A stretch of 64,000 nucleotides of DNA from IMG/VR virus record IMGVR_UViG_3300027771_001853, positions 62,001-126,000 of that record; one strand, written 5' to 3'. The position numbers and the translations under genes are program-made. The notes under the pieces are model-generated. The model ran no database searches. It was not told the origin of the DNA and saw nothing but the letters and a program-made list of their open reading frames with translations. Every line of letters starts with the position of its first letter. Within the stretch, counting starts at the first letter, position 1. Of the stretch, positions 13,181 to 60,075 are shown piece after piece.

Positions 13181-13381
13181 TTATTTACCAACTTTCTTCA
13201 GTATTTTTCTTTCCATGTCTATTATAGTTTTTTCTAGATTTAAAATCTGTTTTTCGACAGTAAGTATTTGTTCTCTTTGTTCTCTAGATGCTTTTGCCTC
13301 CATAATTAACCAAGCGAATGCCACGACCTCTATAATAAATAATAATATTAATAGTGTTGTTTGTATCATATTACCTACCAA
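13181..13381 (-). CDS. small membrane protein with coiled-coil tail
   Basis: Hydrophobic N-terminal helix (TLLILLFIIEVVAFAWLI) then heptad repeats; real start may be the ATG of MIQT. Confidence 0.65.
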   Translation of the reverse strand: MVGNMIQTTLLILLFIIEVVAFAWLIMEAKASREQREQILTVEKQILNLEKTIIDMERKILKKVGK

Positions 13382-26849: not shown

Positions 26850-26863
26850 TTTTTTACTTTTTT

Positions 26864-34864: not shown

Positions 34865-35461
34865 CTACCAAAGTTTATTTTTTAACATGAAACCTCTAAC
34901 ACAAGTATATGCGTCGGTCATATCAAAATTTTCCTTTTTTAATGTGTTGTTTCTAGTGTATTGCCATACAATGTGAGGTTCTTTCTCTGCGACTTTTTCC
35001 CATACTATCATTTTCTTATCGCAACCTTTAGGGTATCCCCCAAATAATACTTTTTTACCATTTTTATTTTCTTTAAACAAAGAAGAGAAAGCACATTTTC
35101 TGGATTCGTAGGTTGAGATGAATTCTGGTACTATCCCTAAAACATCATAAACCACTTTACAAATCATAGAGTTATACCTTAAAAGTGTCCCCACAGTGTA
35201 AACATTATTAGATGTCAAAAGTGGTTCTTCTATTATAACTTTATATATTCCAAAATCTTTAACCTGTTCTAATTTTTCTTTAAAAGCGTCAGCTTTTTTG
35301 AGTAGGTGTTCTATTTTATTTTCTGGTTGTGGTTTAATTACTGGAGAAAAATGGCTCAATTCCAGTAGTCTTTGTTCGAAATTATCGAACAAGGCCCAAC
35401 CTATGGTTTTAGTTGATATATCTAAACCCAGTACTTTTAGTGATGAATCTTTTTTAGTCAT
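34865..35461 (-). CDS. RuvC-like Holliday junction resolvase
   Basis: VLGLDISTKTIGWA, IIEEP, DMTDAY (RNase H-fold acidic tetrad). Confidence 0.8.
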   Translation of the reverse strand: MTKKDSSLKVLGLDISTKTIGWALFDNFEQRLLELSHFSPVIKPQPENKIEHLLKKADAFKEKLEQVKDFGIYKVIIEEPLLTSNNVYTVGTLLRYNSMICKVVYDVLGIVPEFISTYESRKCAFSSLFKENKNGKKVLFGGYPKGCDKKMIVWEKVAEKEPHIVWQYTRNNTLKKENFDMTDAYTCVRGFMLKNKLW

Positions 35462-36585
35462 TAAAATCTAAACTTCAAATTAAAGTATGCCGGTTCATTC
35501 TTAAACTTTTGAATTGGTCTATCTGGTTTTGCTATGGCTATTAACTCACCATCGGTATCATATAGACCTATCTCAGTAACAAATGCCGGCTTATTAACAC
35601 TGCTTAAATCATAACTCCCATCTGGATTTATAGTTATGGCCCCACTTAAGTCAGCTGCACTTGGGTTGTGAGTATTGAAGAATTCGTTCGCTTCAGCTCT
35701 ACACTCAACATCTAAAACCCATTGCTTTTCAAAACTAAAATATGAACATTCTGCTACAGAAGTAAAGTAAATCTGTGTAAAACCACTAGAATAACCAGTA
35801 TAACTGACGTTACCATAAAGGTTTGTAGCAGCTGAATATTGGAAGTTACTGTTCAATGTAGGGTGTGTTATAACACAAAACCCTTTATCCAAATAACATA
35901 TACCCACTGGTTCATCTTGTGGTTGTATAGTATTACCAATAGGGTTAGCTGATGCTTTTTTATCACCAGAATTTAGACTAGAGAAATTTTGTAATTGACC
36001 ACCATCCGCATACCCTATAGGTTGTGAAGCTGTCGTCCAACTATCTGACCATGAACTAACATTAGGGTCGGTAGGAGCCTTTATGGTATCTGAAAATAGG
36101 AAAGCTATGTTAGTGGATGGTGAACCTACTGTTGCTGTACCCCCTGCTGATGTGTGACCAAAAACTTCCGCGTATACACTAGGGTCAGAAGAAACATTTA
36201 CACCATCAAAGTAACTAGTGTAACAATCTACACTACTAGTCACCCCATCTGTCGGTATAGTTAATTTTATTGTTCTACCATCTATTAGTTCACCATATTG
36301 ATTTTTTGGTATTTCTACCACGATTGCTTCATCAACATTAAATCCGGACAAAGCTGTATTTCCCCATTCAGTTGACCAGTTTGTTTGTTGGAAATTGGCT
36401 AGTGGTAAATTAAAAGAGGAGTATAGGTGTGAAAATGGTCTGAAGTTACTAGCACTACGTTGTATCTTAGTAAATCTTAGGTTACTTCCATTAATAATAT
36501 TGTACCCATCCAAATTAGGATTGGGTGTAGAATAAGGGGTTATCTCACTGTAAACCTGTTTATCAAATATTGTTTTGTAATTCAT
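35461..36585 (-). CDS. virion structural protein (tail-collar/baseplate-like C-terminus)
   Basis: C-terminal FVTEIGLYDTDGELIAIAKPDRPIQK resembles DUF3751/tail-collar fibre. Confidence 0.65.
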   Translation of the reverse strand: MNYKTIFDKQVYSEITPYSTPNPNLDGYNIINGSNLRFTKIQRSASNFRPFSHLYSSFNLPLANFQQTNWSTEWGNTALSGFNVDEAIVVEIPKNQYGELIDGRTIKLTIPTDGVTSSVDCYTSYFDGVNVSSDPSVYAEVFGHTSAGGTATVGSPSTNIAFLFSDTIKAPTDPNVSSWSDSWTTASQPIGYADGGQLQNFSSLNSGDKKASANPIGNTIQPQDEPVGICYLDKGFCVITHPTLNSNFQYSAATNLYGNVSYTGYSSGFTQIYFTSVAECSYFSFEKQWVLDVECRAEANEFFNTHNPSAADLSGAITINPDGSYDLSSVNKPAFVTEIGLYDTDGELIAIAKPDRPIQKFKNEPAYFNLKFRF

Positions 36586-36610
36586 TTTTTTTAATTTTTA
36601 ATAATTTTAA

Positions 36611-37108
36611 TTAGTACCCTCCACCCATATTCATACCTCCTGAACCACTACCACCACCAACTGGTCTTACAATACCACCACCAGTAGGTGACGGTGTTGT
36701 TGGTTGTATAGTAGGTCTTATGTTAGCAGTAGGGGTAACAGCTACTACGACTATCTCTCCATTATTTGAAACACCTAACGTGTCTCTAGATGGGTAGAAA
36801 AACCTATAGTAATATCTTGGGTCATTTAAAGCCTTATTACTATTAATATACGAAATTGCGTTAGAACTTGAAGCCCAAGTCTTACCTTTTAAATCTGTCC
36901 TACCTATTACGGAATCCACAGAAATGTATTTAGCTGGTTCATATGTGGATATTGTTTCCCCAGCTGTTTTATCGTATACCGCAGTTCTATGTGCCAATTT
37001 TTCCGTATCCGGAATTGGACTTACACCAAAATAAGGTATCTTGGATATCTGAGACCCGTGGTTATCTGGGAATTCTGTTATAAGTGTTCTAATTACGTCT
37101 TGTATCAT
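36611..37108 (-). CDS. hypothetical protein in structural module
   Basis: 165 aa; ATGA overlap with the upstream gene; P/T/G-rich tail ending GGGY. Confidence 0.6.
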   Translation of the reverse strand: MIQDVIRTLITEFPDNHGSQISKIPYFGVSPIPDTEKLAHRTAVYDKTAGETISTYEPAKYISVDSVIGRTDLKGKTWASSSNAISYINSNKALNDPRYYYRFFYPSRDTLGVSNNGEIVVVAVTPTANIRPTIQPTTPSPTGGGIVRPVGGGSGSGGMNMGGGY

Positions 37109-38778
37109 GATAATGTTACTTTTCTAAAGATGCTACCACCAGCATCATTTTTGTTATTTAATGGACTTACCGAATAATCAGTACCCGCTAAATCTTTATA
37201 GTTTTCACCATAGAATTTAACGTCGGTATTACCGAACAATCTCCATCTTGCTGCTTTGGTATTTGTGGAATAATCCCAAGCAACACTTTCTTTCATAGCA
37301 TTTTTATCAAAAATGAAAGTCACACTTATTTTTGCTGGTGCGACATCTGGGAAGTCTGTGGAGTATGCCAATAAATTCATTTTAAAGTTTATGTTGTAGT
37401 TGTTAACACCACCACTTAATGATATGGAATTACTAACATCCGAATCACTATTTAAAGCGGTAAAGAAAGAGTCCATATAATCGTAATGTCTAGTTAACAT
37501 AGTATAAGGTTCCGTAGAACTATCTACGAAGTTTGGTATTAGAGTCTTATCGTACCCTGATGTTGGTGTACCTACTCTATATTCTGCCGTTCCCGCAGCA
37601 AAGGACAAGAATGTTTCTAAAGCTGAGGAGGATTGTGTTAATGTGGTACCTTCAAAATTTGATTGTGGTGTAGCTTTAAATGTATTCTTTTTAACACTAA
37701 CATTTAATTGTTTAACTGGGTTTAAAGGGTAGTAATAACCAAATTTATTATCAGTAGCAATTCTTGCTGCTGGTACAATATTATTAAATTCACCTAAAGT
37801 CCCAGCGTTATTATCGTTTTCCACATACACACCTTGGTAGAATCCACCTTTTTGGTTTGAAAACCCGTACTTGGTGTACGTCGTATCTTGTGGGTTTAAC
37901 CCATCACCTACAACGTAACCATATTCCTGTAATCCAAAAGCGATAGCAAAAGGACCTGCTCCTGCAAAGGCTCTACCATTTGTATCGTAAGAAGATGAAG
38001 TTGTTAAAGAGTATGGTGAACGAATTGTGGTTTTAGTTTGTACACCAATTGTTGCTCCTTTATAAAAATCAGCTCTACCTTGTGAACCATTTTGTTCTAT
38101 TAGTGCCGCTCCTGTTAATTTTTTAAATATATTTAAATCGTATGGTGTCTCTGGTACTAGTTTTACATTGGTACTTTCGTACTGCCCCCCTCTCTGTAAA
38201 ACAATACCATCGTAAATGTCTAAGTAGAAATCCCTACCCAGGTCAGCTAATTTATAATATAAACTAGCCATATCTCTACCTATACTAAAACCTTCACTAT
38301 CAGTGGTTTTTGTAAACCAGTTTTCGTAAGTCTTAGCTGAGAAACCACTCCAAGTTTGGTACTTTGCTTGTGCGTGGGAGAATGCTTTATACAAGACCAT
38401 TAAGTCATGCATATAGATTTCTACATTAGCAGCTTTACTGTATGTCTTAGTTCCTTGATTATCTAGGAACATAAAAGCCATATTACTTTGTTTTTGGGCT
38501 TTATTTAAAGCTGAGCCCATCCCTGTAATATATTCTAGTTTATATTTTATCTCAAAACCATTATTAACACCAAATATACAATCATTATGTGCTCCTGTAA
38601 CATCTGGAACATACCCTGAAGGTAATGGATTAGTGCTGTTTTTATAATCAGTATCTGAATCACCTAATGTAAACTTTGTTATTTTGTCACCTAGACCTCC
38701 TTGCAATAAGAATTCCCTACCATACTCTGTAGTGTGTAAGTCTAAATAAACTGTCGTTGCGCTTGTAATAAAACCCAT
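37105..38778 (-). CDS. virion structural protein
   Basis: N-terminal MGFI...TEYGREFLLQG...FTLGDSDTDY motif shared with 38838-41174 and 41178-43667. Confidence 0.65.
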   Translation of the reverse strand: MGFITSATTVYLDLHTTEYGREFLLQGGLGDKITKFTLGDSDTDYKNSTNPLPSGYVPDVTGAHNDCIFGVNNGFEIKYKLEYITGMGSALNKAQKQSNMAFMFLDNQGTKTYSKAANVEIYMHDLMVLYKAFSHAQAKYQTWSGFSAKTYENWFTKTTDSEGFSIGRDMASLYYKLADLGRDFYLDIYDGIVLQRGGQYESTNVKLVPETPYDLNIFKKLTGAALIEQNGSQGRADFYKGATIGVQTKTTIRSPYSLTTSSSYDTNGRAFAGAGPFAIAFGLQEYGYVVGDGLNPQDTTYTKYGFSNQKGGFYQGVYVENDNNAGTLGEFNNIVPAARIATDNKFGYYYPLNPVKQLNVSVKKNTFKATPQSNFEGTTLTQSSSALETFLSFAAGTAEYRVGTPTSGYDKTLIPNFVDSSTEPYTMLTRHYDYMDSFFTALNSDSDVSNSISLSGGVNNYNINFKMNLLAYSTDFPDVAPAKISVTFIFDKNAMKESVAWDYSTNTKAARWRLFGNTDVKFYGENYKDLAGTDYSVSPLNNKNDAGGSIFRKVTLS

Positions 38779-38837
38779 ATTCGTTTTCTTATTTATATAA
38801 TTATTTTGTTAGCCAATTATATTTCATTAAATTGGCA

Positions 38838-41174
38838 TTAACTTCCTTTTATACTTAACTTCCACCCATATTCGTTGTCCCCACTTACCCTTATTCTAGT
38901 TTTTTTGGTGAAAAGTTGTTGATTATTGTAGTTAACAACACAGTATAAGCAATATTCCTGTACTTCTTTTTGCCAATAATGTTCATTATCTATCTTTTTT
39001 CTTAAGTCATTTAAATAAAATCTATTATTTAATGTTTTTGTTCCGTTCGCTATAATCCATTCTATATCATAATCCCTACACGGTACTGTTATTTCTTGTT
39101 GTAATTTTCTATCATAAATTAATGATTCTCTCATAAACCAATAATAAGATAAAGAGTCCTTAACATTATTTCTAGGAATTATAGCGTTTAGTTCTATATC
39201 GTAATCCAACCTTTCTACCCTATCGGTACTTGACAGATATGCTACTGCTTGCATTACCACTACCACATCTAAACTCATACAGTCTTCGTATCCTAACACC
39301 CATCCTGGTGCTTGTAAAGGGTCTATGAGTGGTGATGTCGCGAAAGGTTGTACCGGTACTCTTAGTGGTCCGGCCATTGGTGTGGATAATCTTAAAGCTG
39401 TACTATATGTACTACCGTCACATAACCTAATTATCTCTGGGTCTGGGTCACATGGTGGGTCCGGACATGGTGAAGTAGTTTGGGTGGTGGTTATGGTTAC
39501 TATTGGTGCACAAGTACTTCCCCTAAATACAGCGGGTAAACAATAACATATGGTACACGCTGTTGATTTGAACATACTTGTCCTCCCGGTACTAGTAGAA
39601 GCCATCGCTAAGTTAAATAAATTAGAATTAGCTGCACCAGTGAATGTATCTACTATAAATGGTGTGTTACCAGTTATCCATTGGTGTCCGGTAAACGGTG
39701 GTGTGGAACTACTGTCAAAACCTAGTGTATAATTTGACCCAGTCATAGCTGAAACTACTGGAGTACAATTGACCCCATTGGTAGAAAAAGATTTTGTTAA
39801 ATCAGCTATAAACCCTAAATTCCTAAGTCCCTTTAAATTTCCTGGACCTTCTAAATCAGTGTTATAATATGGGTTACTAATAGTTAAAGCGTCATAGTCC
39901 ACACATAAATTTGGTGCGTCTGTGTTGGGTGCTGATACTGTCCCCCCAATGCCACCATTTCCTGCTTCTAATGCACCAAATAAGTGTAGGTTGAAACTGG
40001 AGTATTGATTTACCCCCGTCCCTCCGGTACAAGATATAGGAAATATAAGACCCATAAAATTACCGTTTTTAATCCCACCATATGATTTAGTGTTTTTGTA
40101 GAAGTCTAAAGCTCCTTCACCTTCATTATAACTAGATATGTCACCTGGAAGCCAAGTTGTTCCTCTTGAGGTCCAATTACTTGATGAATCCCCCGCAAAA
40201 TATCTCCAATCTTGATAGTAATCACCACCATATCCTGCTTGTGTGGTTAACCCATCCCAGTCACTAGCTACCCCTGTAGGTACAGATGCTGGTATAAGAG
40301 GTTGGGGGGAGGTATAACTCTCTGAACTACCCATAAAGAATATACAAAACACATCACTATCTGGGTTATACGATTCTAGTATTCCCGTACCGTCACCTGG
40401 GGACCAGTTAGCTCCATCTGGCCAAAAATCACTAGCTATAGCATCATCTCTACCAGGTGGTGGACTATTTTTGACTCCAGCTAATAACCCAAATGCTGGG
40501 AAAGCTGACCATCTCAAGTATCTCCCATGCCCACCATAAGTGGAAGGTATTGTATTTGGTTCGTCGGCTGTATCCATAACAAAGTGATACATTTTACCTT
40601 TATATGATGAGTCTGTTGATTGTACTAACCCAAACCATTGAGTAACAGCTGAATAAAAGTTTGCTTGTGCAGCTAACATTGGTGGTGGTGTTTTCGGTAA
40701 TGCTAGTTCTCCTGGTAAAGGTGTGGAAAGTTGGATTGATTGGTCATAAAAAACATACACATTAGTCTCACTACTCATACCAGTCAGTGAAGTCATACCA
40801 GTATAAAACGTACAATGGTCTGTTGTAAAATATCTTTGTCCCCTAACATCTGGCATACCAAAGAAACAAGGCATTGTGTTAGATGGGGTGGTTTGACCAC
40901 TATTAGCTGTATTTGCTCCTTGAGCCCAAGGAGATACTAATGGTATACAAGCTCCAGTACCACCTTCTGAGAGTGTCTCTAAAGTTTCGTAGTTAAAGTC
41001 GTTGTCCGACATATAAAAATGACCGTCACCATTAGCTTGACCGGAAGGGTTTGAAAGCGAACCACCAAGTAGGTCTGATAACCCCTTACCGTTCAATTCT
41101 ACAATCTTTTGTTTACCCCTGTCGGTTAAAAAAAGTTCTAACTGATATTCTCCATTAAATTCAAGAAACCCCAT
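38838..41174 (-). CDS. virion structural protein
   Basis: MGFL...LTDRGKQKI...FYMSDNDFNY N-terminal motif; G/S/T/P-rich. Confidence 0.65.
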   Translation of the reverse strand: MGFLEFNGEYQLELFLTDRGKQKIVELNGKGLSDLLGGSLSNPSGQANGDGHFYMSDNDFNYETLETLSEGGTGACIPLVSPWAQGANTANSGQTTPSNTMPCFFGMPDVRGQRYFTTDHCTFYTGMTSLTGMSSETNVYVFYDQSIQLSTPLPGELALPKTPPPMLAAQANFYSAVTQWFGLVQSTDSSYKGKMYHFVMDTADEPNTIPSTYGGHGRYLRWSAFPAFGLLAGVKNSPPPGRDDAIASDFWPDGANWSPGDGTGILESYNPDSDVFCIFFMGSSESYTSPQPLIPASVPTGVASDWDGLTTQAGYGGDYYQDWRYFAGDSSSNWTSRGTTWLPGDISSYNEGEGALDFYKNTKSYGGIKNGNFMGLIFPISCTGGTGVNQYSSFNLHLFGALEAGNGGIGGTVSAPNTDAPNLCVDYDALTISNPYYNTDLEGPGNLKGLRNLGFIADLTKSFSTNGVNCTPVVSAMTGSNYTLGFDSSSTPPFTGHQWITGNTPFIVDTFTGAANSNLFNLAMASTSTGRTSMFKSTACTICYCLPAVFRGSTCAPIVTITTTQTTSPCPDPPCDPDPEIIRLCDGSTYSTALRLSTPMAGPLRVPVQPFATSPLIDPLQAPGWVLGYEDCMSLDVVVVMQAVAYLSSTDRVERLDYDIELNAIIPRNNVKDSLSYYWFMRESLIYDRKLQQEITVPCRDYDIEWIIANGTKTLNNRFYLNDLRKKIDNEHYWQKEVQEYCLYCVVNYNNQQLFTKKTRIRVSGDNEYGWKLSIKGS

Positions 41175-41177
41175 ATT

Positions 41178-43667: not shown

Positions 43668-43709
43668 TCTTAATCTATTTTATGATAAATATTATTCATA
43701 TCTGTTATT

Positions 43710-45221: not shown

Positions 45222-45222
45222 T

Positions 45223-47547: not shown

Positions 47548-47551
47548 TTCT

Positions 47552-53500: not shown

Positions 53501-55771
53501 AGTTAAACGATTCTTAACATTTATTAAAACCTTATAGAATTGTGACGCAAATTCAAAGAAACTCATTGTGGAAGCGTTTATCTTAATTTCGGTATTATCT
53601 ACCCCACCTAAACTTGGATATGGTGGGGAAACTAACGCTTTAAGACCAAACGGACACCCATATTTCCTTGAGTGGTTCCAAACGTCCCACTCCAATCCTT
53701 GACCTACATTCATGAATAGTTCCACATTCTTAACATTCATAACTAATCTTTCATCGTCTGTAAAATATTTTGTGCCTCTATCTCTTAGACTGTAGTATCT
53801 TCTTTGGAATGTGTCGTTTTCTTCTACCCATGATTTTTTATTATCGACAGTTCTTGTTATGTCGAACCCATCCATCATAGATGGGAATCTTCTAAATCTA
53901 TTTAAATAAGGTTCACCATAAGTAAAAGCGTTTAATTTAGTTTTAACTGTTGGGCTATTCCCAGTAAAAACAGATTTACTGAAATCAGTTACCCTTCTAC
54001 CTCTATGTTCTAAAGTTTGTTCAAACCATCCTGCCCCAGCTTGGAACCAACTGTCGGTACCAACTTGTGGGACAATTGGGAATCCTTGGTCATTTACGGG
54101 GAAATCTCTTCTAGCATAAGGAATATCAGACACTAATGATTTCGTACCAAAAGTATAACCACTTATAGTTGTAGGTATGTAAGGTGCTGTGGTACTAGGT
54201 TGTGTAGCCGTAAACCCAGTTATTCTTACTGGTATTTCTTGCACATAGGTACCACCGGACATTTTCCCCCATGTGGTATTAAAATTCTTCATGTTAATAC
54301 GTTGACCAGCAACATACACATGTTCGTTAAATTCTATTAGTGCTTCGGGAGCACCAATAAACCTTAACATAAATTCTATAGCTTTCCTTGTACCTTTTGA
54401 TTTAAATAGATAGGCTGTATTTAGAATTAATCTTCTATACAAGTCCACATCTAACTCTGCTGGTGTTTTATTACTTACCTCACCACTATATAAAGACTCT
54501 TCTTTTTTCGCTTCTAAGCCAAAAACCGAATCTAAAAAACTATCTTCACTAATAGCTGATGGTGTTTTCCACCCAATAACTTGAGCTAGATTTTTTAATA
54601 AAGCGTCTGGTACATTATCTTGTTTACTATAACTAACATTATTCATGTAAGCTAAACCTTCTATATATTTTTTAACCTCATCAAAACTTCTACCATAAAT
54701 CTGTAAAACTTTTTCTACCTTGTGTTCTGGGGTATCAAATTCTTTTAAGGCTGCAGTAGTTAGGAATCTAGAAATAAGGTTAGTTTTTTCTCTATCCAAT
54801 GCGTCACCAATATCATATAACGAAGTCAAATAAGCCCCAAAAGTAGCTCCTGATATCATAATATTCCAATCGTCTTGCATAGGCCATGTTACTAACTCGG
54901 TAGCCCCAAAGACTTCACCATCTTCCGTTGTTTTCTTTATCTGGAATGTCGAGGTGTATTTTGGGACCGTACTCCTACTTAAAAGATACTGTTCTACATC
55001 AGACATAGAATTGAATATCTCTTCTATTCTAGTTTCTGATAGTTTTACTTGGTAATCCAATAAGGTTGTCCCTGTAATACTACTAGCCCCACTAAATGGG
55101 TTACCTTGGACTATAAAACTTAGTCTACTGTCTGTGGAAGCTGTCGGTGGTGCGTATGACAGTACTGGGTAATTGTTACCTTGTACAGATATGACATAAT
55201 CAGTGAATTTTTTAGTTAAATTACGATATTCACTTGTTCTATTATCACTAGTAGGTAGATTACCTTTTGTCGTAAACTCAATATTAAATGGGTTATTTAA
55301 TCTTGATGACCCAACACTAAAAGTAGCCTCATTCACATTAGGGTCGTAAGTATAACCACTACTAGTATTACCACTAAGTAAATTAAGACCCACTCTATTA
55401 ACGTGTATCACAGCTGGGAAATTTCTTATGACATTAAGAACGGAAACCCTGAATTTTTCTTTTAGGGACCCGAATTGGGTAAAGTTAGTAATCTTGGACC
55501 TATCGTAATTTACAAATACTTCTAATCTATTAGAAACTAATTTTAATGATTCTTCTACCGATTCTATATTAAGACTACTTAACGTGATTGGTTCAGAAAA
55601 ACTACCTAAATCGAAATCTCTATCATCTTTAGTGGGTACAGAATCAGTAACAGCGAAATTACCCAAAGTGAATTGGGGTGTTCCTGTCACATATTGATTA
55701 CCTACTAGATAATCACTGAATGTCCCTGCTCCATTACCAGGTCTTAATTTGTTGTTCTCTCCGTTAGCCAT
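47552..55771 (-). CDS. giant (2739 aa) baseplate wedge-like protein with Cys-rich central insertion
   Basis: VPDALLKNLAQVIGW and LILNTAYLFKSKGTRKAIEFMLRFIG (P2 gpI/T4 gp7-like KGT motif), EQFIPATT; Cys-rich low-complexity middle. Confidence 0.7.
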   Translation of the reverse strand: MANGENNKLRPGNGAGTFSDYLVGNQYVTGTPQFTLGNFAVTDSVPTKDDRDFDLGSFSEPITLSSLNIESVEESLKLVSNRLEVFVNYDRSKITNFTQFGSLKEKFRVSVLNVIRNFPAVIHVNRVGLNLLSGNTSSGYTYDPNVNEATFSVGSSRLNNPFNIEFTTKGNLPTSDNRTSEYRNLTKKFTDYVISVQGNNYPVLSYAPPTASTDSRLSFIVQGNPFSGASSITGTTLLDYQVKLSETRIEEIFNSMSDVEQYLLSRSTVPKYTSTFQIKKTTEDGEVFGATELVTWPMQDDWNIMISGATFGAYLTSLYDIGDALDREKTNLISRFLTTAALKEFDTPEHKVEKVLQIYGRSFDEVKKYIEGLAYMNNVSYSKQDNVPDALLKNLAQVIGWKTPSAISEDSFLDSVFGLEAKKEESLYSGEVSNKTPAELDVDLYRRLILNTAYLFKSKGTRKAIEFMLRFIGAPEALIEFNEHVYVAGQRINMKNFNTTWGKMSGGTYVQEIPVRITGFTATQPSTTAPYIPTTISGYTFGTKSLVSDIPYARRDFPVNDQGFPIVPQVGTDSWFQAGAGWFEQTLEHRGRRVTDFSKSVFTGNSPTVKTKLNAFTYGEPYLNRFRRFPSMMDGFDITRTVDNKKSWVEENDTFQRRYYSLRDRGTKYFTDDERLVMNVKNVELFMNVGQGLEWDVWNHSRKYGCPFGLKALVSPPYPSLGGVDNTEIKINASTMSFFEFASQFYKVLINVKNRLTIDDAKGGGYPTLQNVYDDYINNYLVTCGVDSSKYTYQKMIDYTSKIGDYWIRLMEQFIPATTIWQGGVRFENSIFHRYKFPYKHEPVCDDVPCLGSYIDCARPPLYDTLANHCYNCEDTFSASTGHTNWTANIEINGQSYTSDVYYTSTGCTDPPQTSFWFSAMTGMLAGIQGNTADPNSGLTYYVVDNTTDNTIDINGDGTPDIYLNNPDAILIQGPCSEAGEDLWNFNNGSDPHTYNSYQSLFETDWSTTGMTSAYTAVYHFTLTTGNTPTYNFVSGHDLISGPSSLFPPPSIIDGGGLSTCWNCPGTGMTQGTVHYCVDWGFAGCTGGTSAYSATTSWSGITGNTFIQSATTWSCTDGTHRPNLLTNQYGSMWGHDTTLFVSGMTLSYDQNTVSFSGAMTATSIVYSGVCCETFHAGCGGMEDILTGNTVCPCDTVQGGYFSPLGNIGLSVTQTPANLIAMWNLGYWQDIQQQGVNTLVTVEGYGCYQLQTNVNYILYNPSEITQLLANHWLHMPCSGSTTNYQLPFDGGNNLWKGADCNDATFIPENPPVTGTTSATTSPEIFKDGIFNLGGKACYQEYYPCAQLMDPCECLPAQTQWEYQVSTGIGDYNLAHTPFSPGDCVSCWTGDTSISFINTCTHGGAGHPFTLWGNITPYSSSPGTFAIASSPGPACPAPCLAYPNGFEIHQTDGQGFCDSVAAAEFASNCMTLCTKFDIAVCTEQRAGGYESEDGPVPPTGPNKGHSGIISQVAPRALFNPCDFDTVTQTTTNGGGGSCECDATIGAATPDNTGLVDVAFTRVDPSLVPDEIINMPWFGPLASNTSLSVQDQRYPIHGYNVGEAACAKITLCCLTNMLQFKTSSYSYETAAFGPPGIVAEIAGKLKTDENTIIELWLLGSQSPATAYGQTAADLFSNNLMFTHPTHISNQLWMLVDDSAIKEMSVRNFLTASFWQTHASGGATNVVLGNKIPIRLGVCDSSTDLYQTAPMMEGLYGLFGLSNDISSPPSQIGMAGDHMTTSHWYSGWHGMGGYMQGAAYEIFHCNDGNLTSSEGASISHMYQGLAVGGPYTSGVLWDGNSSVSEPPNINNPLGQNGAGYDLNPLVGLGYSECWSTQFQSYCRRDTVQTNYGNLVFVVHDNFDAMVTTQGELDGLVPTKPCPQGGGEPAISRTLQSYLPQVFEPSEPLGVALSEGGTFEFDYGAFLEDKMPLYPDNAYEIFRSEPYIIMNSKSLNSGLKDLKYNNPDIRTHFGGAEFQTFTHNDNTEYQVGWRKEIQNEDNAQFINFPSVNQREDFEKSLKEQQIAGIESYNLFMQSKEYPIKWESVLQWAQRSVGNPWFSNSTIHTAPDGSFSGITIRPDSFYSLEEQGHAYYVPINDPATEIVGTTWSSWPQFTADKSGFTQSYTGYTDYSLSGTETTQMFDLYFNYSAFTGTTLIPLSNKSPLDSHLIGIDDSKIRAAILPESLGCNGGPTEINTQEGGIVYAPTRDGKYRIQFKAVLDVIYEDNSWCDYVNRFYKKEELDYSYPSNNYEYKELINSAIILKGGRVLQSPTIEIDPKTLVNNLEGTIADKYTNIKPYWRSNPATGYNTGGINDFYFRIYLTNQSGQSETTLTEYTLTTSELVRSRADDYLTYDLIETDKDINTMSCSGSTSEILHKSFDVNLDTGPILLSGDTDVIRLKYEAYWSSNPKDTGSTKTCAFKVNLGRKEPTNAEDSSSPWVRITRRPYDLPTINKEFTWKKDEKNKPNIINLPSGEQKDLATVGKLYINTSEVKSDYVNPNGFISITPRNFNNQTFLDIPSKGYNGPMVLEKQPGRATNLWSYTLSNEYKKNTPKITDYYINTDKSIEWEGLKLRWNLPYQNRAQTTERSVFPSVDNSYVIKTTFRSKMFKQSMFDHFIVINPSENDFTERDDYTVNVQQRLKGDFNKTVTVAQPSQDCDKRVYLSSEGIIIDGKRAKISSTSYNLNTPNNTPIIGDRKKLR

Positions 55772-55774
55772 ATA

Positions 55775-56680
55775 CTATACAATATTATTGAAAGCTTTAC
55801 TAAAATCTATATTATCTCCCCTATCTTGACGTACTTCATACAATGAATTACCAAACTCATCTCTTTGTTCGAATAAATTATATTGTTTAAATATATTATT
55901 ATCTTTATCGTATAAAGTGTATATTCCGTCAGTAATAGATTTTGTTTGATTACCATATAATGCTATAGCTAAACTATCTAAATCGTAATCAACCATTTCT
56001 ATTTCCATACACACAGGATTAAATTGAGTGTTACTTAATATAACTTCTTGATTTGGGTGTCCTATATATGGTAATGCGTGAGGTTTATTTGTTGGTGCTG
56101 TGGTGGGTGTTAGTGTACAGAATAATAAATTACTTCCACCGTTTACGTATCTATACCTAATAGCTTTTTGGTTACTATTAGTCATGTTTTGTGTTATTGG
56201 TTCACAGAAAAAATTAGATGTAACTATTCTATATAAATTAGGTATTTTAGTACCGTCAGCATTTAAATATTCTATTCTAAAACCTACAAGACCATTATTA
56301 ACAAATTTATTTCTATACTCTGGTGGCACATTATTAATATCAAATATAACACCCTTTACGTTAGGTAGTGAGGATAGTACACCACAATCCGCTAATGGTG
56401 TTCTTATTTCAGCTGGTTTAATATACAGAGTGTATATCCCTTTATCTTTAAATTGGGTTGCTGGTAATTGTAGATTGTATAACCCACCCAATAATTCTAT
56501 ATTAGGGTTACCACCCGTAGTGGTATTATGATAATATGGTGTTAAAATAGATGAAGCGTCCAATTTTCTTATAACTGGTACTTCGGTAGCGTCTCTCGAT
56601 GAGGTGTATACCATTAATATATCAACGTCGTCTGGTGATACATCTGAAGGTCTTTTAATTCCGTATGTTCCTAATGCCAT
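55775..56680 (-). CDS. structural-module protein
   Basis: 301 aa globular ORF coupled to both neighbours. Confidence 0.7.
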   Translation of the reverse strand: MALGTYGIKRPSDVSPDDVDILMVYTSSRDATEVPVIRKLDASSILTPYYHNTTTGGNPNIELLGGLYNLQLPATQFKDKGIYTLYIKPAEIRTPLADCGVLSSLPNVKGVIFDINNVPPEYRNKFVNNGLVGFRIEYLNADGTKIPNLYRIVTSNFFCEPITQNMTNSNQKAIRYRYVNGGSNLLFCTLTPTTAPTNKPHALPYIGHPNQEVILSNTQFNPVCMEIEMVDYDLDSLAIALYGNQTKSITDGIYTLYDKDNNIFKQYNLFEQRDEFGNSLYEVRQDRGDNIDFSKAFNNIV

Positions 56681-59600
56681 TTTGTACTTTTTGTTAATTC
56701 TTTGTTTATTTGGTAGAAACCATATCCATATATTTCTAATCCCCCGATAGTATCAATTTCACCTAACCTTTGGGAACTCTCAAATACTGACTGTTTGCCT
56801 CTGTTAATAAATAGTTCTGACTGAATTTCTACTTCCTGACAAACATTTATTAATACTTCCTCTTTTGTGATAGCCGACATACATAATTCAATTTCATGTC
56901 CATTGTATGGATTTAACCCCACAGGTACCTCCATTTCAGGGTAAATACAAGTCCCATCATCTACAAGAGCTAGATTATTATAGTTGGTTGCGAGTGGGTC
57001 TGTACACCCATATTGTGGGTAAACACAACAACTAGTATCGTTTATATTTGGTGGGGAACCGCAGCCCAATACTGTCGGTCCACCGTAATTTATCGCTAAT
57101 GGGTCATTACATCCTTGCCCTACACCACCATATTCACAACAACCATCATCCACATCAGGTAAACCTACATTATCCCCATTACAATTAAACTTCCAATTTG
57201 AAGCTAAAGGGTCTGTACAACCATAAATCGGAAATTCACAACAACATTCTGGGGTTGGTACACCACATGGATTAGGGTTCGCAACATCATCACAAGGAAG
57301 ATTAGCAGCTGGATTATAGTTGATGGCTGACGTATTCATACAACCAACTGTAGGGTCTGGACACCCAGTATCAAATGTAGCATATGGACAATAAAGAGGA
57401 TGTCCTGGGTCCATACACCCTGGAAGTTCTATAACACAACTACCATCATCTATCGAATAACTACTTGGTGAAGCATTTGGTGGGTTATATAAGTTTCCAT
57501 TACATGATATTAGTGGACCCGCAGGCATACCCGCTAATGCTGGATATATATTAGCGTAAGATACCGAAGCTGGGGTCGTATATGGGCCCACTTGAACAAT
57601 ACTTGTGTTTAGGTGGTCCCCAAATATAGGGGTGTTAGGTGGTGTTGCTAATGCACTTTCAAATTGACCTGAACCTACATTATATGTACATCCAGCGTCA
57701 AAGTAACAACAATCATTAGTACCACCGGCTGTATTACAAGGATTTATTGTAACCCAAGTTGCCGTTGCGTTTTGTGTCATTACAGTCAAATTTAAAGATA
57801 GAGAACCAGCAATAAAATTACCATTATCGTCCCATACCCCACGCATATAATTTGATGCCGCTGGGTCTAAACATGCTTGGATGGTGTACATACACCCACC
57901 AAAACCCTCTCCATTAATGTGGGCTGGTTTAGCACCATAATTTACTGTGTTTGCTGGTCCAGCGTTTCTTGGCCAGTTATCAACGTAATTTGAAGGATTG
58001 GTACCTAGATTATCCGCTACAACACCAGCACCTGCTGGGTTTGATGGTATGAATGAATCCATTGGGTCACCGTTGGAACTGTATTGGTTACCGTCGTCCA
58101 AACACCCATAAACATAAGGGGTACATGAGTGATGTCTCCAAGCATCTCCACCGTAGGTGGTGTCGTAGTTTCCATCTCCATAGTTTGGCCATAATGTTCC
58201 TGAATTTTTGTTTTGCCAATAATCACCAGCATCTACCTCATAATAAGTTCTTCCTCCCGTTGCTGGTGTGTAGGCAGCACCCCAATTGTCTGGATGCCCA
58301 GCACAAGTAATACCCATCGGTGCATTTGTAGTTGGGGCAGTAGTTGGGTCACAGGCACCGGAACCAACACCATTAGAACCAACAGTACCGGCATAAGGTC
58401 TAATAACATGACTAGGTGGGTCATTTGCAGATACACTAAAAGTACCGGTATACCAATCTTGAGGTACGTTACTATAATTACAATCACAGTAATATTGGTC
58501 CATACTAAATCCTTGCATTACTCTCTTGTTAAACTGCATATCTACAGTCAAAGCGTACCCATATCTATCTATTTGAGCTGAACAACAGTAATTAGGCCCA
58601 CTACCTATTTTCTGTCTATATTGTGGTTGTGGTTCTGATGTTAAAGCTTTTTGTTTACGTAATTCCTGTCTTAAATAATCCTGAGGTGTAAAATTATCTG
58701 TTAATAGGTGTGACCAATGTCTATTATCGTTTTTATTTGCATTTAAAGAAAATCCTTGTCTTTTTAATGGGGGACTAATAAAACTACTTGCACATTCTTC
58801 CCAATGTCCAGACTGTGCAGAAGGTTCAATACCAACACTACTACTAACATCGTATCCTGTTCTCCAATAACACTGTGTTTGTCCGGCTTGGTTAACCCAT
58901 TCCACTATCATCCCAGCATCATAATCAGTAGCACTTCCCACAGCAAGAGCTGATGGCGGTGGTGGTGATTGCCATACACCAAACCACCCTATAAATGCAC
59001 CAGTGGAATTAGGACACGGACATGGTGATACTGGTGTGTAGTTACAACATATGTGGTCTAAATTTTTATAATCTAAACCGTAGGTATACCCACTAAACGT
59101 TGTACCACCAGAAGTGTCAATATATAATATATCATTAACGGTATAACCTGTAGCTATATCTGTTATATAATTAATTACACCACTACCATCAGCACCGTTT
59201 AAAGGTACTGTTGCCCCAACCACATACATATTAGGTCCCCAGTTTTGTAATATTGTTAAATGACTCTCACTTTCTCCAGTTATATAAAAAGGCATAGTCG
59301 TACCGAAATTAGCTTGTGCGTTACTAAAATGGTCCATCACATCAGGGTTACTATCCCCGCTAAAGATATAGTCTTGGAATATACTTTCACACCCAATAGG
59401 TGTTTCAAACCCTGGGGGTTTTAGTTCTATGGTACCAAACATATTACCAGCTGAAGGATAATTCATGGTATATGGTAGAGTTATATGTTTTGAAACGTAT
59501 ACTGTCCCCCATGGGTTTATTTGTTGTAATGTCATCGTATACCCAGTTAAATTAGGTAGGTATGTATGTGTAGATATTGGTGTTGCTATTGATAGGTCGT

Positions 59601-60075
59601 CTATGGTAGAACCGTCACCCCAATTCAATGTATAGTTTGAGAATTCTAAGAATTTTTTAAATTGGAAATCTGAGCTATTAAAGACCGTAACATTGTAACC
59701 GTTCCCAGTATAAACAAAGTTTGTTACAACATCTCTTTGTAATACCATACCATCAAAAGGTGTATATACCCCTATATCGTTAAAGTCTTCAGTTAAACAA
59801 AGTGTTACTGTTGCTCCTGACACACATGGTGGTGTTGGTCCCTCTCCTCTAACTGGAGCAGTATTTCTCCATGTTTTACACCAATAATCCTTTTCTACTG
59901 GAGCTTTCCAATAATCACAAAACCCGTTTTGAAAGAAGAAACAGTCCTCACATTTTTGACCTGAGGGGACATCTTTAGATGTGTACGGTTGGTAGGCCAC
60001 AGGTAATTGTGGTGGAATAACATCAGTTCTTCCAGGGTAAAGTTTTCTTTTTATTTTTATATTAATCTTTTCCAT
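56671..60075 (-). CDS. multidomain virion protein: HiPIP-like module, PKD-like domain, CBM5/12-like module, GCxDP repeats
   Basis: GQKCEDCFFF..FCDYW..V..YWCKTW; LNWGDGS..HTY; W..YDAGMIVEW..CYW..EPS...W; about 7 GC(T/M/N)DP.A.NY-type repeats. Confidence 0.7.
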   Translation of the reverse strand: MEKINIKIKRKLYPGRTDVIPPQLPVAYQPYTSKDVPSGQKCEDCFFFQNGFCDYWKAPVEKDYWCKTWRNTAPVRGEGPTPPCVSGATVTLCLTEDFNDIGVYTPFDGMVLQRDVVTNFVYTGNGYNVTVFNSSDFQFKKFLEFSNYTLNWGDGSTIDDLSIATPISTHTYLPNLTGYTMTLQQINPWGTVYVSKHITLPYTMNYPSAGNMFGTIELKPPGFETPIGCESIFQDYIFSGDSNPDVMDHFSNAQANFGTTMPFYITGESESHLTILQNWGPNMYVVGATVPLNGADGSGVINYITDIATGYTVNDILYIDTSGGTTFSGYTYGLDYKNLDHICCNYTPVSPCPCPNSTGAFIGWFGVWQSPPPPSALAVGSATDYDAGMIVEWVNQAGQTQCYWRTGYDVSSSVGIEPSAQSGHWEECASSFISPPLKRQGFSLNANKNDNRHWSHLLTDNFTPQDYLRQELRKQKALTSEPQPQYRQKIGSGPNYCCSAQIDRYGYALTVDMQFNKRVMQGFSMDQYYCDCNYSNVPQDWYTGTFSVSANDPPSHVIRPYAGTVGSNGVGSGACDPTTAPTTNAPMGITCAGHPDNWGAAYTPATGGRTYYEVDAGDYWQNKNSGTLWPNYGDGNYDTTYGGDAWRHHSCTPYVYGCLDDGNQYSSNGDPMDSFIPSNPAGAGVVADNLGTNPSNYVDNWPRNAGPANTVNYGAKPAHINGEGFGGCMYTIQACLDPAASNYMRGVWDDNGNFIAGSLSLNLTVMTQNATATWVTINPCNTAGGTNDCCYFDAGCTYNVGSGQFESALATPPNTPIFGDHLNTSIVQVGPYTTPASVSYANIYPALAGMPAGPLISCNGNLYNPPNASPSSYSIDDGSCVIELPGCMDPGHPLYCPYATFDTGCPDPTVGCMNTSAINYNPAANLPCDDVANPNPCGVPTPECCCEFPIYGCTDPLASNWKFNCNGDNVGLPDVDDGCCEYGGVGQGCNDPLAINYGGPTVLGCGSPPNINDTSCCVYPQYGCTDPLATNYNNLALVDDGTCIYPEMEVPVGLNPYNGHEIELCMSAITKEEVLINVCQEVEIQSELFINRGKQSVFESSQRLGEIDTIGGLEIYGYGFYQINKELTKSTKWH

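What the first reader, a model, noticed from the sequence alone, without database searches (positions are those of the whole stretch)
35461..60075. Pervasive [ST]-[GA]-x-T tetrapeptide in structural proteins: possible modification sequon
Seen: SGAT, SAMT, SGVT, SANT, TGMT, TGNT, SATT, SGMT, TGYT, SAYT and similar recur dozens of times in 41178-43667, 38838-41174, 45223-47547, 47552-55771 and the fibre at 8216, often in tandem (VSAMTGGT, SAYSATTSWSGITGNT). By eye they are rare in the enzymes. The window also encodes RmlB. Inference: a phage-specific O-glycosylation or other PTM sequon on the virion surface, distinct from the Bacteroidota D-(S/T)-x sequon.
Basis: partly seen in the sequence, partly recalled or inferred. 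Interest (0 to 1): 0.62.

Follow-up and report, generated by a model that had tools for sequence, protein, structure and literature searches.

The report
Clade-specific Ser-Gly/Ala-x-Thr motif in phage tail proteins
A five-residue motif (hydrophobic-Ser/Thr-Gly/Ala-x-Thr) occurs four to five times more often than chance in the large tail, baseplate and fibre proteins of one group of about 300-kb aquatic phages that also carry their own sugar-transfer enzymes, so it could mark sites where sugars are attached to the virus particle, but no modification has been shown.

Summary
In the window, seven proteins carry 99 [ST][GA]xT sites against 19.4 expected. The other 43 ORFs carry 12 against 11.6. 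Across the whole genome (a 297,623-bp T4-like jumbo phage), 20 proteins carry 300 sites against 72-80 expected, even when residues are shuffled within 10-residue blocks.

The order of residues matters. Permuted patterns and [ST][GA]xS sit at expectation. Position -1 is hydrophobic, Asp/Asn cannot replace Ser/Thr, and Val/Ile/Ser cannot replace the final Thr. Codon use inside the motif matches background, and the other five frames show no excess, so selection acts on the protein.

Most of the enriched proteins are not paralogues, and the sites have no periodic spacing. Orthologues retain sites 3-20 times more often than expected. Fragments and genomes of the same ~300-kb phage clade show the same enrichment. 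T4, Flavobacterium phage immuto, Microcystis phage Mel-JY01 and bacterial SprB adhesins do not.

In the one usable model, the sites lie in loops. The genome holds a ~17-kb sugar-nucleotide and glycosyltransferase island next to the capsid gene. Three glycosyltransferases flanking it are conserved in two related genomes.

A sequon for a phage-encoded O-glycosylation system is the best single reading (about 0.35). A clade-specific structural loop motif is nearly as likely. Nothing here shows that a modification occurs.

The parts
8216..10141 (+). 641-aa fibre-like protein. It has 14 motif sites, in two clusters (residues 51-159 and 362-414) plus two near the C-terminus. Its paralogue lies at genome 29056-30936.
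   Evidence: no Pfam or PHROG family
38838..41174 (-). 778-aa protein of the distal baseplate/fibre block, with 8 sites (z 4.5).
   Evidence: The orthologue at 69% identity keeps 7 of 8 sites against 2.2 expected.
41178..43667 (-). 829-aa protein with 12 sites (z 7.4), including the overlapping SAMT/TGGT pair.
   Evidence: Orthologues at 57% identity keep 6-7 of 12 sites against about 2 expected.
43710..45221 (-). 503-aa protein with 8 sites (z 6.8).
45223..47547 (-). 774-aa protein with 14 sites (z 7.5). It has an N-terminal SprB-type Ig-like repeat whose core SGGTPPY supplies one site. The model shows further Ig/FN3-like domains and a ConA/lectin-like jelly roll.
47552..55771 (-). 2739-aa giant protein with 36 sites (z 12.1). 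20 of them lie in residues 878-1387.
   Evidence: Orthologues in L024-L028 are also enriched. The fold of residues 850-1420 failed.
56671..60090 (-). 1139-aa Cys-rich protein with 7 sites (z 3.4). It shares repeats with the T9SS-CTD protein at genome 39355-43320.
37105..38778 (-). 557-aa neighbour that is NOT enriched (2 sites vs 1.5). It serves as an internal contrast. Both sites are kept in all but one of the orthologues compared.
25812..26873 (-). It lies next to a CysK-like cysteine synthase at 26864-27754.

Best explanation
Phi-[S>T]-[G/A]-x-T is a recognition element (sequon) for a phage-encoded enzyme that works in the host cytoplasm and modifies Ser/Thr hydroxyls in exposed loops of tail-sheath, baseplate-periphery and fibre proteins. 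The most likely enzyme is an O-glycosyltransferase. Under this reading, one of the glycosyltransferases conserved across the clade places the first sugar. The candidates are a 289-aa virus-type GT2, a 353-aa GT related to Actinobacillus Agt/AmGGT, and a Glyco_tranf_2_5 protein. The variable sugar island between them would then elaborate the glycan; it encodes two Gmd, an Fcl-like enzyme, aminotransferases, GT11, a NodZ/FUT8-like protein, further GT2s, sulfotransferases and a methyltransferase. The result would be a strain-specific glycan coat on the tail apparatus. Shown here: the motif, its residue specificity, its selection, its clade restriction, its placement in loops in one model, and the enzyme repertoire with its conservation pattern. 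Inferred only: that the motif is modified, which residue is the acceptor, which enzyme acts, and what the glycan does.
For: 1. The excess is order-specific. There are 300 sites against 72-80 expected under global and local shuffles, and permuted patterns sit at expectation.
2. The chemistry is narrow. Position 0 is S 6.4x and T 2.6x, with D and N at 0.7x. Position 1 is G 4.2x and A 4.3x. Position 3 is T 4.2x, but S 1.1x, V 0.9x and I 0.8x. Position -1 is M/L/I/V/W/F/Y/C at 6.6-11.8x, with R/E/K/D at 1.1x or less. K, E, P and W are disfavoured at x. A demand for hydroxyl residues that excludes their usual structural substitutes is what enzyme recognition predicts.
3. The signal is at protein level. 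Codon use matches background and the other five frames show no excess.
4. The motif recurs in about 14 protein families that BLAST does not relate to each other, with uninformative flanks and no periodicity.
5. Sites are under purifying selection. Orthologues keep 7/12 vs 1.9 expected, 7/8 vs 2.2 and 4/14 vs 0.7. Same-column conservation across distant homologues is 55 vs 3.7. Homologues at 28-31% identity have different site sets yet keep z 5-12.
6. The enrichment is restricted to one clade. Most of the 36 IMG/VR loci fetched from about 300-kb genomes have O/E 2.5-5.5; four have pooled O/E 0.6-1.2 but still hold one strongly enriched ORF. Pooled, they give 1263 vs 412. T4 gives 23 vs 23.0. 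Flavobacterium phage immuto, Mel-JY01 and part of LR756502 and bacterial SprB adhesins outside the SGGTxPY core are at or near expectation.
7. In the AF2 model (pLDDT 65.9), 13 of 14 sites have coil at +1/+2 (P 0.005) and 8 of 14 overlap low-confidence loops (P 0.0125). All 8 sheath sites lie in the N-terminal extension and none in the conserved sheath core.
8. A sugar/GT island of about 17 kb lies at genome 216.7-233.7 kb, directly beside the Gp23-type capsid gene. Its three flanking GTs are conserved in both related near-complete genomes. BLASTP finds none of the three in immuto, and the two that were also searched in Mel-JY01 and LR7565xx are absent there. The 353-aa GT matches PDB 8XSG at E 2e-7. 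Homologues of that protein elongate glucose on glycopeptides in the cytoplasm (PMC12159676).
9. Mucin-like poly-Thr linkers occur in the same set of proteins.
Against: There are no mass-spectrometry, staining or structural data, and no cultured isolate. The link between the GTs and the motif rests on co-occurrence within a single clade, which amounts to one evolutionary event. Immuto also has GT2 genes but no motif enrichment. Comparable sugar islands in T4-like cyanophages are usually read as genes for remodelling the host surface (PMC9602691), and phage GTs also modify DNA (PMC12619734). Sites are conserved at exact alignment columns and do not drift within loops (17 near-misses vs 32.5 under the null), as a structural element would behave. 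The capsid protein is not clearly enriched (3 vs 1.3). One S/T/G-rich 1977-aa protein has only 1 site against 7 expected. Non-virion proteins are not clearly depleted of the motif (O/E 0.75-1.2 in the clade), so there is no sign of selection against off-target sites. No homologue of a known protein O-glycosyltransferase was found: GT41 and O-FucT gave no hit.
Confidence: 0.35

Rival explanations
1. The motif is a clade-specific structural element with no modification. In this view Phi-S-[G/A]-x-T is a preferred way to leave a beta-strand and form a tight loop. The hydrophobic residue would be the last one in the core, a small residue would allow the turn, and the Ser and Thr hydroxyls would cap the backbone. 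The motif would have spread through the beta-sandwich-rich tail proteins of this lineage because it helps folding or assembly, possibly with the phage's own Hsp70/DnaJ/Hsp20/ClpB set.
For: 13 of 14 sites are in coil, and several start 0-3 residues after a strand end. Position -1 is strongly hydrophobic, and Pro and charged residues are excluded at x. Sites are conserved at exact columns with no local drift. One instance is a known structural core of the SprB repeat, SGGTxPY. The phage encodes its own chaperones.
Against: Asp and Asn, the usual equivalents of Ser/Thr in Asx/ST turns, are not enriched (0.7x). Ala is as good as Gly at +1, which does not fit a Gly-dependent turn. Ser, Val and Ile cannot replace the final Thr. 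Beta-rich virion proteins of T4, immuto and Mel-JY01, and SprB adhesins, show no excess, so it is not a general rule of such folds. Several large proteins of the same genome that are likely virion components lack the excess.
Confidence: 0.33
2. The motif is the target of a different post-translational chemistry or a docking site for a non-enzymatic partner. Examples are phosphorylation, acylation, sulfation or methylation of Ser/Thr. Another is a short linear motif bound by an assembly factor, a decoration protein or a host surface component.
For: The same specificity and selection data apply. The island also encodes two sulfotransferase-like proteins, a methyltransferase and an AsnB-like amidotransferase. 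The window encodes MetK (SAM synthetase) and CysK.
Against: No protein kinase, acyltransferase or similar candidate was identified, though only part of the Pfam content was visible. Sulfo- and methyltransferases that sit inside sugar clusters normally decorate glycans, which is a statement from general knowledge. Nothing points to a particular partner.
Confidence: 0.15
3. The excess is an artefact of composition, low complexity, repeated domains or a DNA-level signal.
For: The proteins are rich in S, T and G and contain poly-Thr runs and Cys-rich repeats. In the pooled clade set, permuted patterns are mildly raised (1.2-1.7x) when only global composition is used as the null.
Against: Block shuffles down to 10 residues leave a 3.8-fold excess, z about 25. 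Permuted patterns are at 0.7-1.2x in the own genome. Codon use is background and the other frames show no excess. Few of the proteins are paralogues. There is no periodicity. An S/T/G-rich protein has 1 site against 7 expected.
Confidence: 0.02

Closest known systems
Virion O-glycosylation in mycobacteriophages (Freeman et al. 2023, PMC10527164, as cited in PMC12619734; details from my own knowledge)
   Same: The phage encodes glycosyltransferases next to its structural genes, the acceptors are Ser/Thr hydroxyls, and the modification happens in the cytoplasm before or during assembly.
   Different: In mycobacteriophages the glycans sit on Ser/Thr-rich C-terminal extensions of the capsid and tail-tube subunits, with no defined short sequon. 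Here the candidate sites are dispersed loop motifs in sheath-extension, baseplate and fibre proteins. The capsid protein is not clearly enriched, the GTs are unrelated, and no modification has been shown.
Chlorovirus PBCV-1 Vp54 glycosylation at atypical virus-specific sequons by virus-encoded cytoplasmic enzymes (reviewed in PMC9614988; details from my own knowledge)
   Same: A large virus with its own sugar-nucleotide and GT genes, including a GDP-fucose pathway, and a non-canonical recognition sequence that the host does not share.
   Different: PBCV-1 has N-linked glycans on Asn of the major capsid protein of a eukaryotic virus. Here the acceptor would be O-linked Ser/Thr on tail proteins of a bacteriophage, and N-x-S/T is depleted if anything (238 vs 281-301).
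Bacteroidota general O-glycosylation sequon D-(S/T)-(A/I/L/V/M/T)
   Same: A three- to five-residue Ser/Thr sequon followed by a small or methyl-bearing residue, in the phylum predicted to host this phage.
   Different: Asp at -1 is not favoured (1.1x, against 7-12x for hydrophobic residues). The D[ST][AILVMT] pattern is at expectation (77 vs 78-84). The host system acts on exported proteins in the periplasm, whereas virions assemble in the cytoplasm (general knowledge).
Actinobacillus NGT / Agt (alpha6GlcT) cytoplasmic protein glycosylation (PMC12159676)
   Same: A conserved 353-aa phage GT is a distant sequence relative of AmGGT/Agt (E 2e-7). Agt extends sugars on glycopeptides in the cytoplasm.
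   Different: No GT41/NGT initiating enzyme is present, and the sequon there is N-x-S/T. The similarity is weak and says nothing about the acceptor.
'Moraphages', large aquatic phages predicted to infect Flavobacteriia (PMC12619734)
   Same: The genome matches their gene set: T4-like structural genes, glutamine synthetase, DnaK, DnaJ and several core glycosyltransferases. It also matches their size class and aquatic metagenome origin.
   Different: Membership was not tested by phylogeny. The passages of the paper that I read (a term search) do not mention the motif.

Membership tests
Bacteroidota O-glycosylation sequon D-(S/T)-(A/I/L/V/M/T) | Asp immediately before the acceptor Ser/Thr | tested here: not met
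   D at -1 is 1.1x, while M/L/I/V/W/F/Y are 6.6-11.8x.
Bacteroidota O-glycosylation sequon D-(S/T)-(A/I/L/V/M/T) | Over-representation or retention of D[ST][AILVMT] in the target proteins | tested here: not met
   77 observed vs 78-84 expected in the 20 motif-rich proteins. 360 vs 456 in the pooled clade set.
Bacteroidota O-glycosylation sequon D-(S/T)-(A/I/L/V/M/T) | Substrates are exported and glycosylated in the periplasm | not testable with these tools
   Virion proteins are normally assembled in the cytoplasm (general knowledge). Signal peptides were not analysed.
Mycobacteriophage-type virion glycosylation | Phage-encoded glycosyltransferases adjacent to structural genes | tested here: met
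   GT/sugar island at genome 213-233.7 kb; Gp23-type capsid gene at 236,753-238,591.
Mycobacteriophage-type virion glycosylation | Acceptors are Ser/Thr-rich C-terminal extensions of the capsid and tail-tube subunits | tested here: not met
   The capsid protein has 3 sites vs 1.3 expected. Sites are dispersed in fibre, baseplate and sheath-extension proteins. The tail tube was not examined.
Mycobacteriophage-type virion glycosylation | Glycans detected on virion proteins | not testable with these tools
   This needs mass spectrometry or staining of virions, and no isolate exists.
NGT/HMW1C-type cytoplasmic N-glycosylation | GT41 initiating enzyme | tested here: not met
   PF13844 gives no match at E<=1 in the genome.
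NGT/HMW1C-type cytoplasmic N-glycosylation | N-x-S/T sequon enriched in targets | tested here: not met
   238 observed vs 281-301 expected.
Regular structural repeats (beta-helix hexapeptide, beta-roll, collagen-like, fibre shaft repeats) | Fixed period between motif copies | tested here: not met
   The spacing distribution has no peak, only a mild excess at 12 aa or less (69 vs 54).
Regular structural repeats (beta-helix hexapeptide, beta-roll, collagen-like, fibre shaft repeats) | Extended repeat consensus around the motif / homologous repeat units | tested here: not met
   Flanks from -8 to +11 carry almost no information apart from position -1. Only three paralogue pairs exist among the 20 proteins.
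Generic ST-/Asx-turn or type II' beta-turn | Asp/Asn interchangeable with Ser/Thr at the capping position; Gly specifically required at i+1 | tested here: not met
   D 0.7x and N 0.7x at position 0. A 4.3x equals G 4.2x at position 1.
Generic ST-/Asx-turn or type II' beta-turn | Found at similar frequency in beta-rich proteins generally | tested here: not met
   T4 virion proteins 23 vs 23.0. Immuto and Mel-JY01 have essentially no enriched proteins. SprB adhesins are at expectation outside the SGGTxPY core.
Generic ST-/Asx-turn or type II' beta-turn | Located in loops next to beta-strands | tested here: met
   13 of 14 sites have coil at +1/+2, P 0.005. This comes from one model with mean pLDDT 65.9.
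SprB repeat (PF13573) | Core SGGTxPY within an Ig-like repeat | tested here: met
   This accounts for exactly one site, residue 51 of the 774-aa protein. It does not explain the other 13 sites of that protein or the genome-wide excess.

The most novel reading that the evidence does not exclude
This clade of ~300-kb Flavobacteriia-type jumbo phages runs its own cytoplasmic protein O-glycosylation system with a defined five-residue sequon, Phi-S/T-G/A-x-T. A conserved initiating glycosyltransferase and a hypervariable sugar island, analogous to an O-antigen locus, would coat the tail sheath, baseplate periphery and fibres with strain-specific, possibly fucosylated and sulfated glycans. This would be the first bacteriophage glycosylation sequon that can be read directly from sequence.
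Probability: 0.3. Interest if true: 0.82.

Novelty: new variant of a known kind. Interest (0 to 1): 0.64.

Why it matters
If the motif is a sequon, candidate modified sites on uncultured jumbo-phage particles could be predicted from sequence alone. The three conserved glycosyltransferases would become testable candidates for a protein-modifying enzyme with a short, portable recognition tag, which could be useful for glyco-engineering. The variable sugar island beside the capsid gene would then read as a locus that diversifies the particle surface, with consequences for host recognition, defence evasion and grazing or immune recognition. If the motif is structural instead, it is an unusually sharp, lineage-restricted rule for building loops in very large beta-rich tail proteins, and a handy sequence marker for this phage clade. 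Either way, it is a real, strongly selected short linear motif that I found no published account of.

Tried and rejected
- **Composition and low complexity:** rejected by block shuffles and permuted patterns.
- **DNA-level motif:** rejected, because codon use is background and the other five frames show no excess.
- **A single repeated domain or paralogy:** rejected.
- **A periodic fibre repeat:** rejected.
- **A host-type signature:** rejected, because SprB adhesins lose their small excess once the SGGTxPY core is removed.
- **A general feature of T4-like or Flavobacterium phage virions:** rejected.
- **Sites drifting within loops, as N-glycan sequons do:** not seen.
- **Searches that gave nothing useful:**
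  - Pfam and PHROGs on the window's structural proteins found no family above its cut-off; the only hits were sub-threshold (SprB and Sorb in Pfam, one weak PHROG).
  - tblastn of the 1139-aa protein and of a motif-rich relative against cultured phages found nothing.
  - The profile search with the 774-aa family was swamped by SprB-repeat adhesins. It still gave 13 full-length relatives, 10 of them new.
- **Second structure prediction:** the giant protein's residues 850-1420, with 6 sequences, failed at pLDDT 33.6 and was not used.
- **Specific enzyme families:** O-FucT (PF10250) and GT41 (PF13844) are not found, and GT1/GT4 (PF00534) gives only sub-threshold hits.
- **Records not held:** The genome search could not reach the 368-kb NCBI relative.
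- **Literature:** searches found no report of this motif or of glycosylated virions in this clade.
Full report
**What the sequence is.** The window is bases 62,001-126,000 of a single 297,623-bp virus record (34.7% G+C, CheckV completeness 93%). It is a T4-like jumbo phage. It has a Gp23-type capsid protein, a T4-type portal, a prohead protease, gp25 and gp32. It also has a tail sheath with an ~830-residue N-terminal extension.

It carries ClpP, MetK, DnaJ, a DruA-like protein, a CysK-like enzyme and an RmlB-like dehydratase in the window. Elsewhere it carries Hsp70, a ClpB-like ATPase, Hsp20, superoxide dismutase, glutamine synthetase, a sigma factor and NusG. A phage-encoded protein with a type IX secretion sorting domain and SprB repeats point to a Bacteroidota host.

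This gene set matches the recently described 'moraphages', which are predicted to infect Flavobacteriia (PMC12619734). Membership was not tested by phylogeny. The motif-rich block in the window lies directly downstream of the baseplate wedge gene gp25 (genome 130,186-130,425). By position it is the distal baseplate/fibre module, which is an inference.

- In the window, seven proteins carry 99 [ST][GA]xT sites against 19.4 expected from per-protein shuffles (z 3.4 to 12.1). The other 43 ORFs carry 12 against 11.6.
One enriched gene (43710-45221) was missed.
- Genome-wide there are 364 sites against 147 expected. The excess is concentrated in 20 proteins totalling 21,181 residues.
- In those 20 proteins, 300 sites stand against 72 expected under global shuffling and 76-80 when residues are shuffled only within 40-, 20- or 10-residue blocks. 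Local S/T/G richness is therefore not the cause.
- Patterns with the same composition but another order give 55-90. These are [GA][ST]xT, Tx[GA][ST], Tx[ST][GA], [ST]x[GA]T, [ST][GA]T and [ST][GA]xxT. [ST][GA]xS gives 60 against 56-62.
- Codon use inside the motif equals background, and the other five reading frames show no excess. The signal is therefore selected at the protein level.

**Anatomy of the motif.**

| Position | Favoured | Not favoured |
|---|---|---|
| -1 | M, L, I, V, W, F, Y, C (6.6-11.8x) | R, E, K, D (<=1.1x) |
| 0 | S 6.4x, T 2.6x | every other residue <=1.3x, including D and N at 0.7x |
| +1 | G 4.2x, A 4.3x | S 0.9x, C 0.3x |
| +2 (x) | most residues | K, E, P, W |
| +3 | T 4.2x | S 1.1x, V 0.9x, I 0.8x |
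| +4 | most residues | P |

- Beyond these positions the flanks from -8 to +11 carry almost no information.
- Sites show no periodic spacing and only mild short-range clustering, 69 against 54 gaps of 12 residues or less. 'Often in tandem' therefore overstates it.
- Only three pairs among the 20 proteins are detectably paralogous. The motif thus recurs in roughly 14 unrelated protein families.

**Selection and phylogenetic spread.**
- Syntenic orthologues keep the full motif far more often than the conservation of the same residue types outside motifs predicts: 7/12 against 1.9 at 57% identity, 7/8 against 2.2 at 69%, and 4/14 against 0.7 at 31%.
- Across 16 distant homologues of the 774-aa protein, same-column retention is 55 against 3.7 under the null. 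Near-miss positions are not enriched (17 against 32.5).
- Each lineage also has many private sites and keeps z between 5 and 12, apart from one homologue at z 2.1.
- The 557-aa neighbour is un-enriched in every relative.
- I fetched 36 IMG/VR loci; 27 of them share only a SprB repeat with the query. Most show O/E 2.5-5.5 in ORFs of 300 aa or more. Four have pooled O/E 0.6-1.2 but still contain one strongly enriched ORF.
- CheckV completeness values indicate that these contigs are pieces of ~290-300-kb genomes, that is, one jumbo clade.
- Pooled, 172 ORFs hold 1263 sites against 412 expected, with the same positional preferences.
- Two near-complete relatives have 6 and 9 enriched proteins.

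**Controls.**
- T4 virion proteins give 23 against 23.0.
- The cultured Flavobacterium phage immuto (capsid protein 42% identical) has essentially no enriched protein.
- Microcystis phage Mel-JY01 has none. A 200-kb part of the huge phage LR756502 has one mild case.
- Giant bacterial SprB adhesins lose their small excess once the SprB core SGGTxPY is removed.
- The motif is therefore neither a property of beta-rich virion proteins in general nor of host surface proteins.

**Structure.**
- A model of the 774-aa protein from a 21-sequence alignment reached mean pLDDT 65.9 and pTM 0.67.
- It shows Ig/FN3-like domains followed by a lectin-like jelly roll. The fold matches are weak.
- 13 of 14 sites have coil at +1/+2, against 60% for other Ser/Thr (P 0.005). 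8 of 14 overlap segments with pLDDT below 50, against 30% (P 0.0125). Several begin 0-3 residues after a strand end.
- In the tail sheath, all eight sites lie in residues 123-734 and none in the conserved sheath domains at 837-1122. By chance that has P of about 0.09.
- A second model, of the densest stretch of the giant protein, failed at pLDDT 33.6 and was discarded.

**Enzymes.**
- Much more relevant is a ~17-kb island at genome 216.7-233.7 kb, immediately beside the capsid gene. It encodes:
  - two GDP-mannose 4,6-dehydratases and an Fcl-like GDP-fucose synthase;
  - a GalE/TviC-like epimerase and an RfbH/PseC-like aminotransferase;
  - a methyltransferase and two sulfotransferase-like proteins;
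  - an AsnB-like amidotransferase;
  - a NodZ/FUT8-like protein, two GT2s, TOD1/MUCI70-like, GT11 and GT7C/GT2_2 proteins, and a Glyco_tranf_2_5 protein.
- Comparison with the two related near-complete genomes shows that the middle of this island is variable. Three glycosyltransferases are conserved in both: a 289-aa virus-type GT2, a 353-aa GT, and the Glyco_tranf_2_5 protein.
- None of the three has a BLASTP hit in immuto. The 289-aa and 353-aa GTs are also absent from Mel-JY01 and two LR7565xx huge phages.
- The 353-aa GT is a distant relative (E 2e-7) of PDB 8XSG, Actinobacillus AmGGT. Its Agt homologues extend glucose on glycopeptides in the cytoplasm (PMC12159676).
- No GT41/NGT and no O-FucT family member was found.
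- The same protein set also carries mucin-like poly-Thr linkers.

**Interpretation.**
- *What is shown:* a sharply defined, strongly selected, clade-restricted pentapeptide located in loops of tail-associated proteins, in phages that share a conserved set of glycosyltransferases and a variable sugar island.
- *For a sequon:* the motif demands hydroxyl residues and excludes their usual structural stand-ins (Asp/Asn at position 0; Ser/Val/Ile at +3). Gly and Ala are equivalent. It is absent from comparable proteins of other phages. These points favour recognition by an enzyme.
- *For a structural element:* the column-exact conservation, the hydrophobic residue at -1 and the placement at strand ends fit a structural loop just as well. 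The GT link rests on a single clade.
- *Other uses for the island:* similar sugar islands in cyanophages are usually read as host-surface remodelling genes (PMC9602691). Phage GTs can also target DNA.
- *Confidences:* about 0.35 for the O-glycosylation sequon, 0.33 for an unmodified structural motif, 0.15 for another modification or a docking motif, and 0.02 for artefact. The remainder is unassigned.
- *Bacteroidota D-(S/T)-x sequon:* it is clearly not involved.

**Novelty.** Phage virion glycosylation is known, in mycobacteriophages, and virus-specific sequons are known, in chloroviruses. A short O-linked sequon in bacteriophage tail proteins would be a new variant of that kind. The literature searches found no description of this motif, and the passages I read of the moraphage paper do not mention it.

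Noticed in passing
window 47552-55771 and 56671-60090; genome 170155-171687, 173497-176652, 39355-43320 (L011:5155-6684, L011:8497-11649, L006:9355-13317): The same proteins carry a second over-represented motif, G-C-x-D(-P), often as '[IL]GCTDxxAxNYNP'. GCxD occurs 37 times against 3.2 expected. It marks short Cys-rich modules.
   Followed up: partly
genome 187576-201114 (4512-aa protein; spans L012/L013): This protein has about 45 poly-Thr runs of 4-7 residues, many spaced roughly 10 residues apart. These are mucin-like linkers between Cys-rich modules. The protein also has 37 motif sites against 18 expected.
   Followed up: partly
genome 39355-43320 (L006:9355-13317, minus strand): A phage-encoded 1320-aa Cys-rich protein ends in a type IX secretion C-terminal sorting domain (Por_Secre_tail, E 2.8e-11). 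That implies export by the host T9SS and a Bacteroidota host. It shares repeats with window 56671-60090.
   Followed up: partly
genome 213089-233729 (L014:3089 to L015:8726): The sugar/GT island is a variable cassette. Its flanks (a 289-aa GT2, a 353-aa Agt-like GT and Glyco_tranf_2_5) are conserved in related 272-kb and 297-kb genomes. The Gmd/Fcl/GT11/sulfotransferase core differs between them or is absent.
   Followed up: yes
window 13371-14546 (-): A DruA-like protein (Pfam DruA, E 1.4e-23), a component of the Druantia anti-phage system, is encoded by the phage itself.
   Followed up: no
window 651-1334, 1346-2497, 14860-15840, 26864-27754, 11503-12783: The window holds host-like genes: ClpP, SAM synthetase MetK, DnaJ, a CysK-like cysteine synthase (next to the RmlB-like gene, in a phage with Cys-rich virion proteins) and a leucine-rich-repeat protein.
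   Followed up: no
the 20 motif-rich proteins, genome-wide: The eukaryote/NGT-type sequon N-x-S/T is under-represented: 238 observed against 281-301 expected.
   Followed up: no
genome 181607-187540 (L012:1607-7537, minus strand): A 1976-aa S/T/G-rich protein sits next to the 4512-aa giant. It has only 1 motif site against 7 expected, which shows the motif is protein-specific and does not simply follow composition.
   Followed up: partly
genome 157863-161270 (L010:7863-11267, minus strand): The tail sheath protein has an ~830-residue N-terminal extension in front of the conserved sheath domains. All 8 of its motif sites lie in the extension.
   Followed up: partly
window 45223-47547, residues about 20-120: The SprB-type repeat in this phage protein matched thousands of giant bacterial gliding-motility adhesins in the profile search (21,839 hits at E<=0.001). 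This suggests domain exchange between the phage and host surface proteins.
   Followed up: partly
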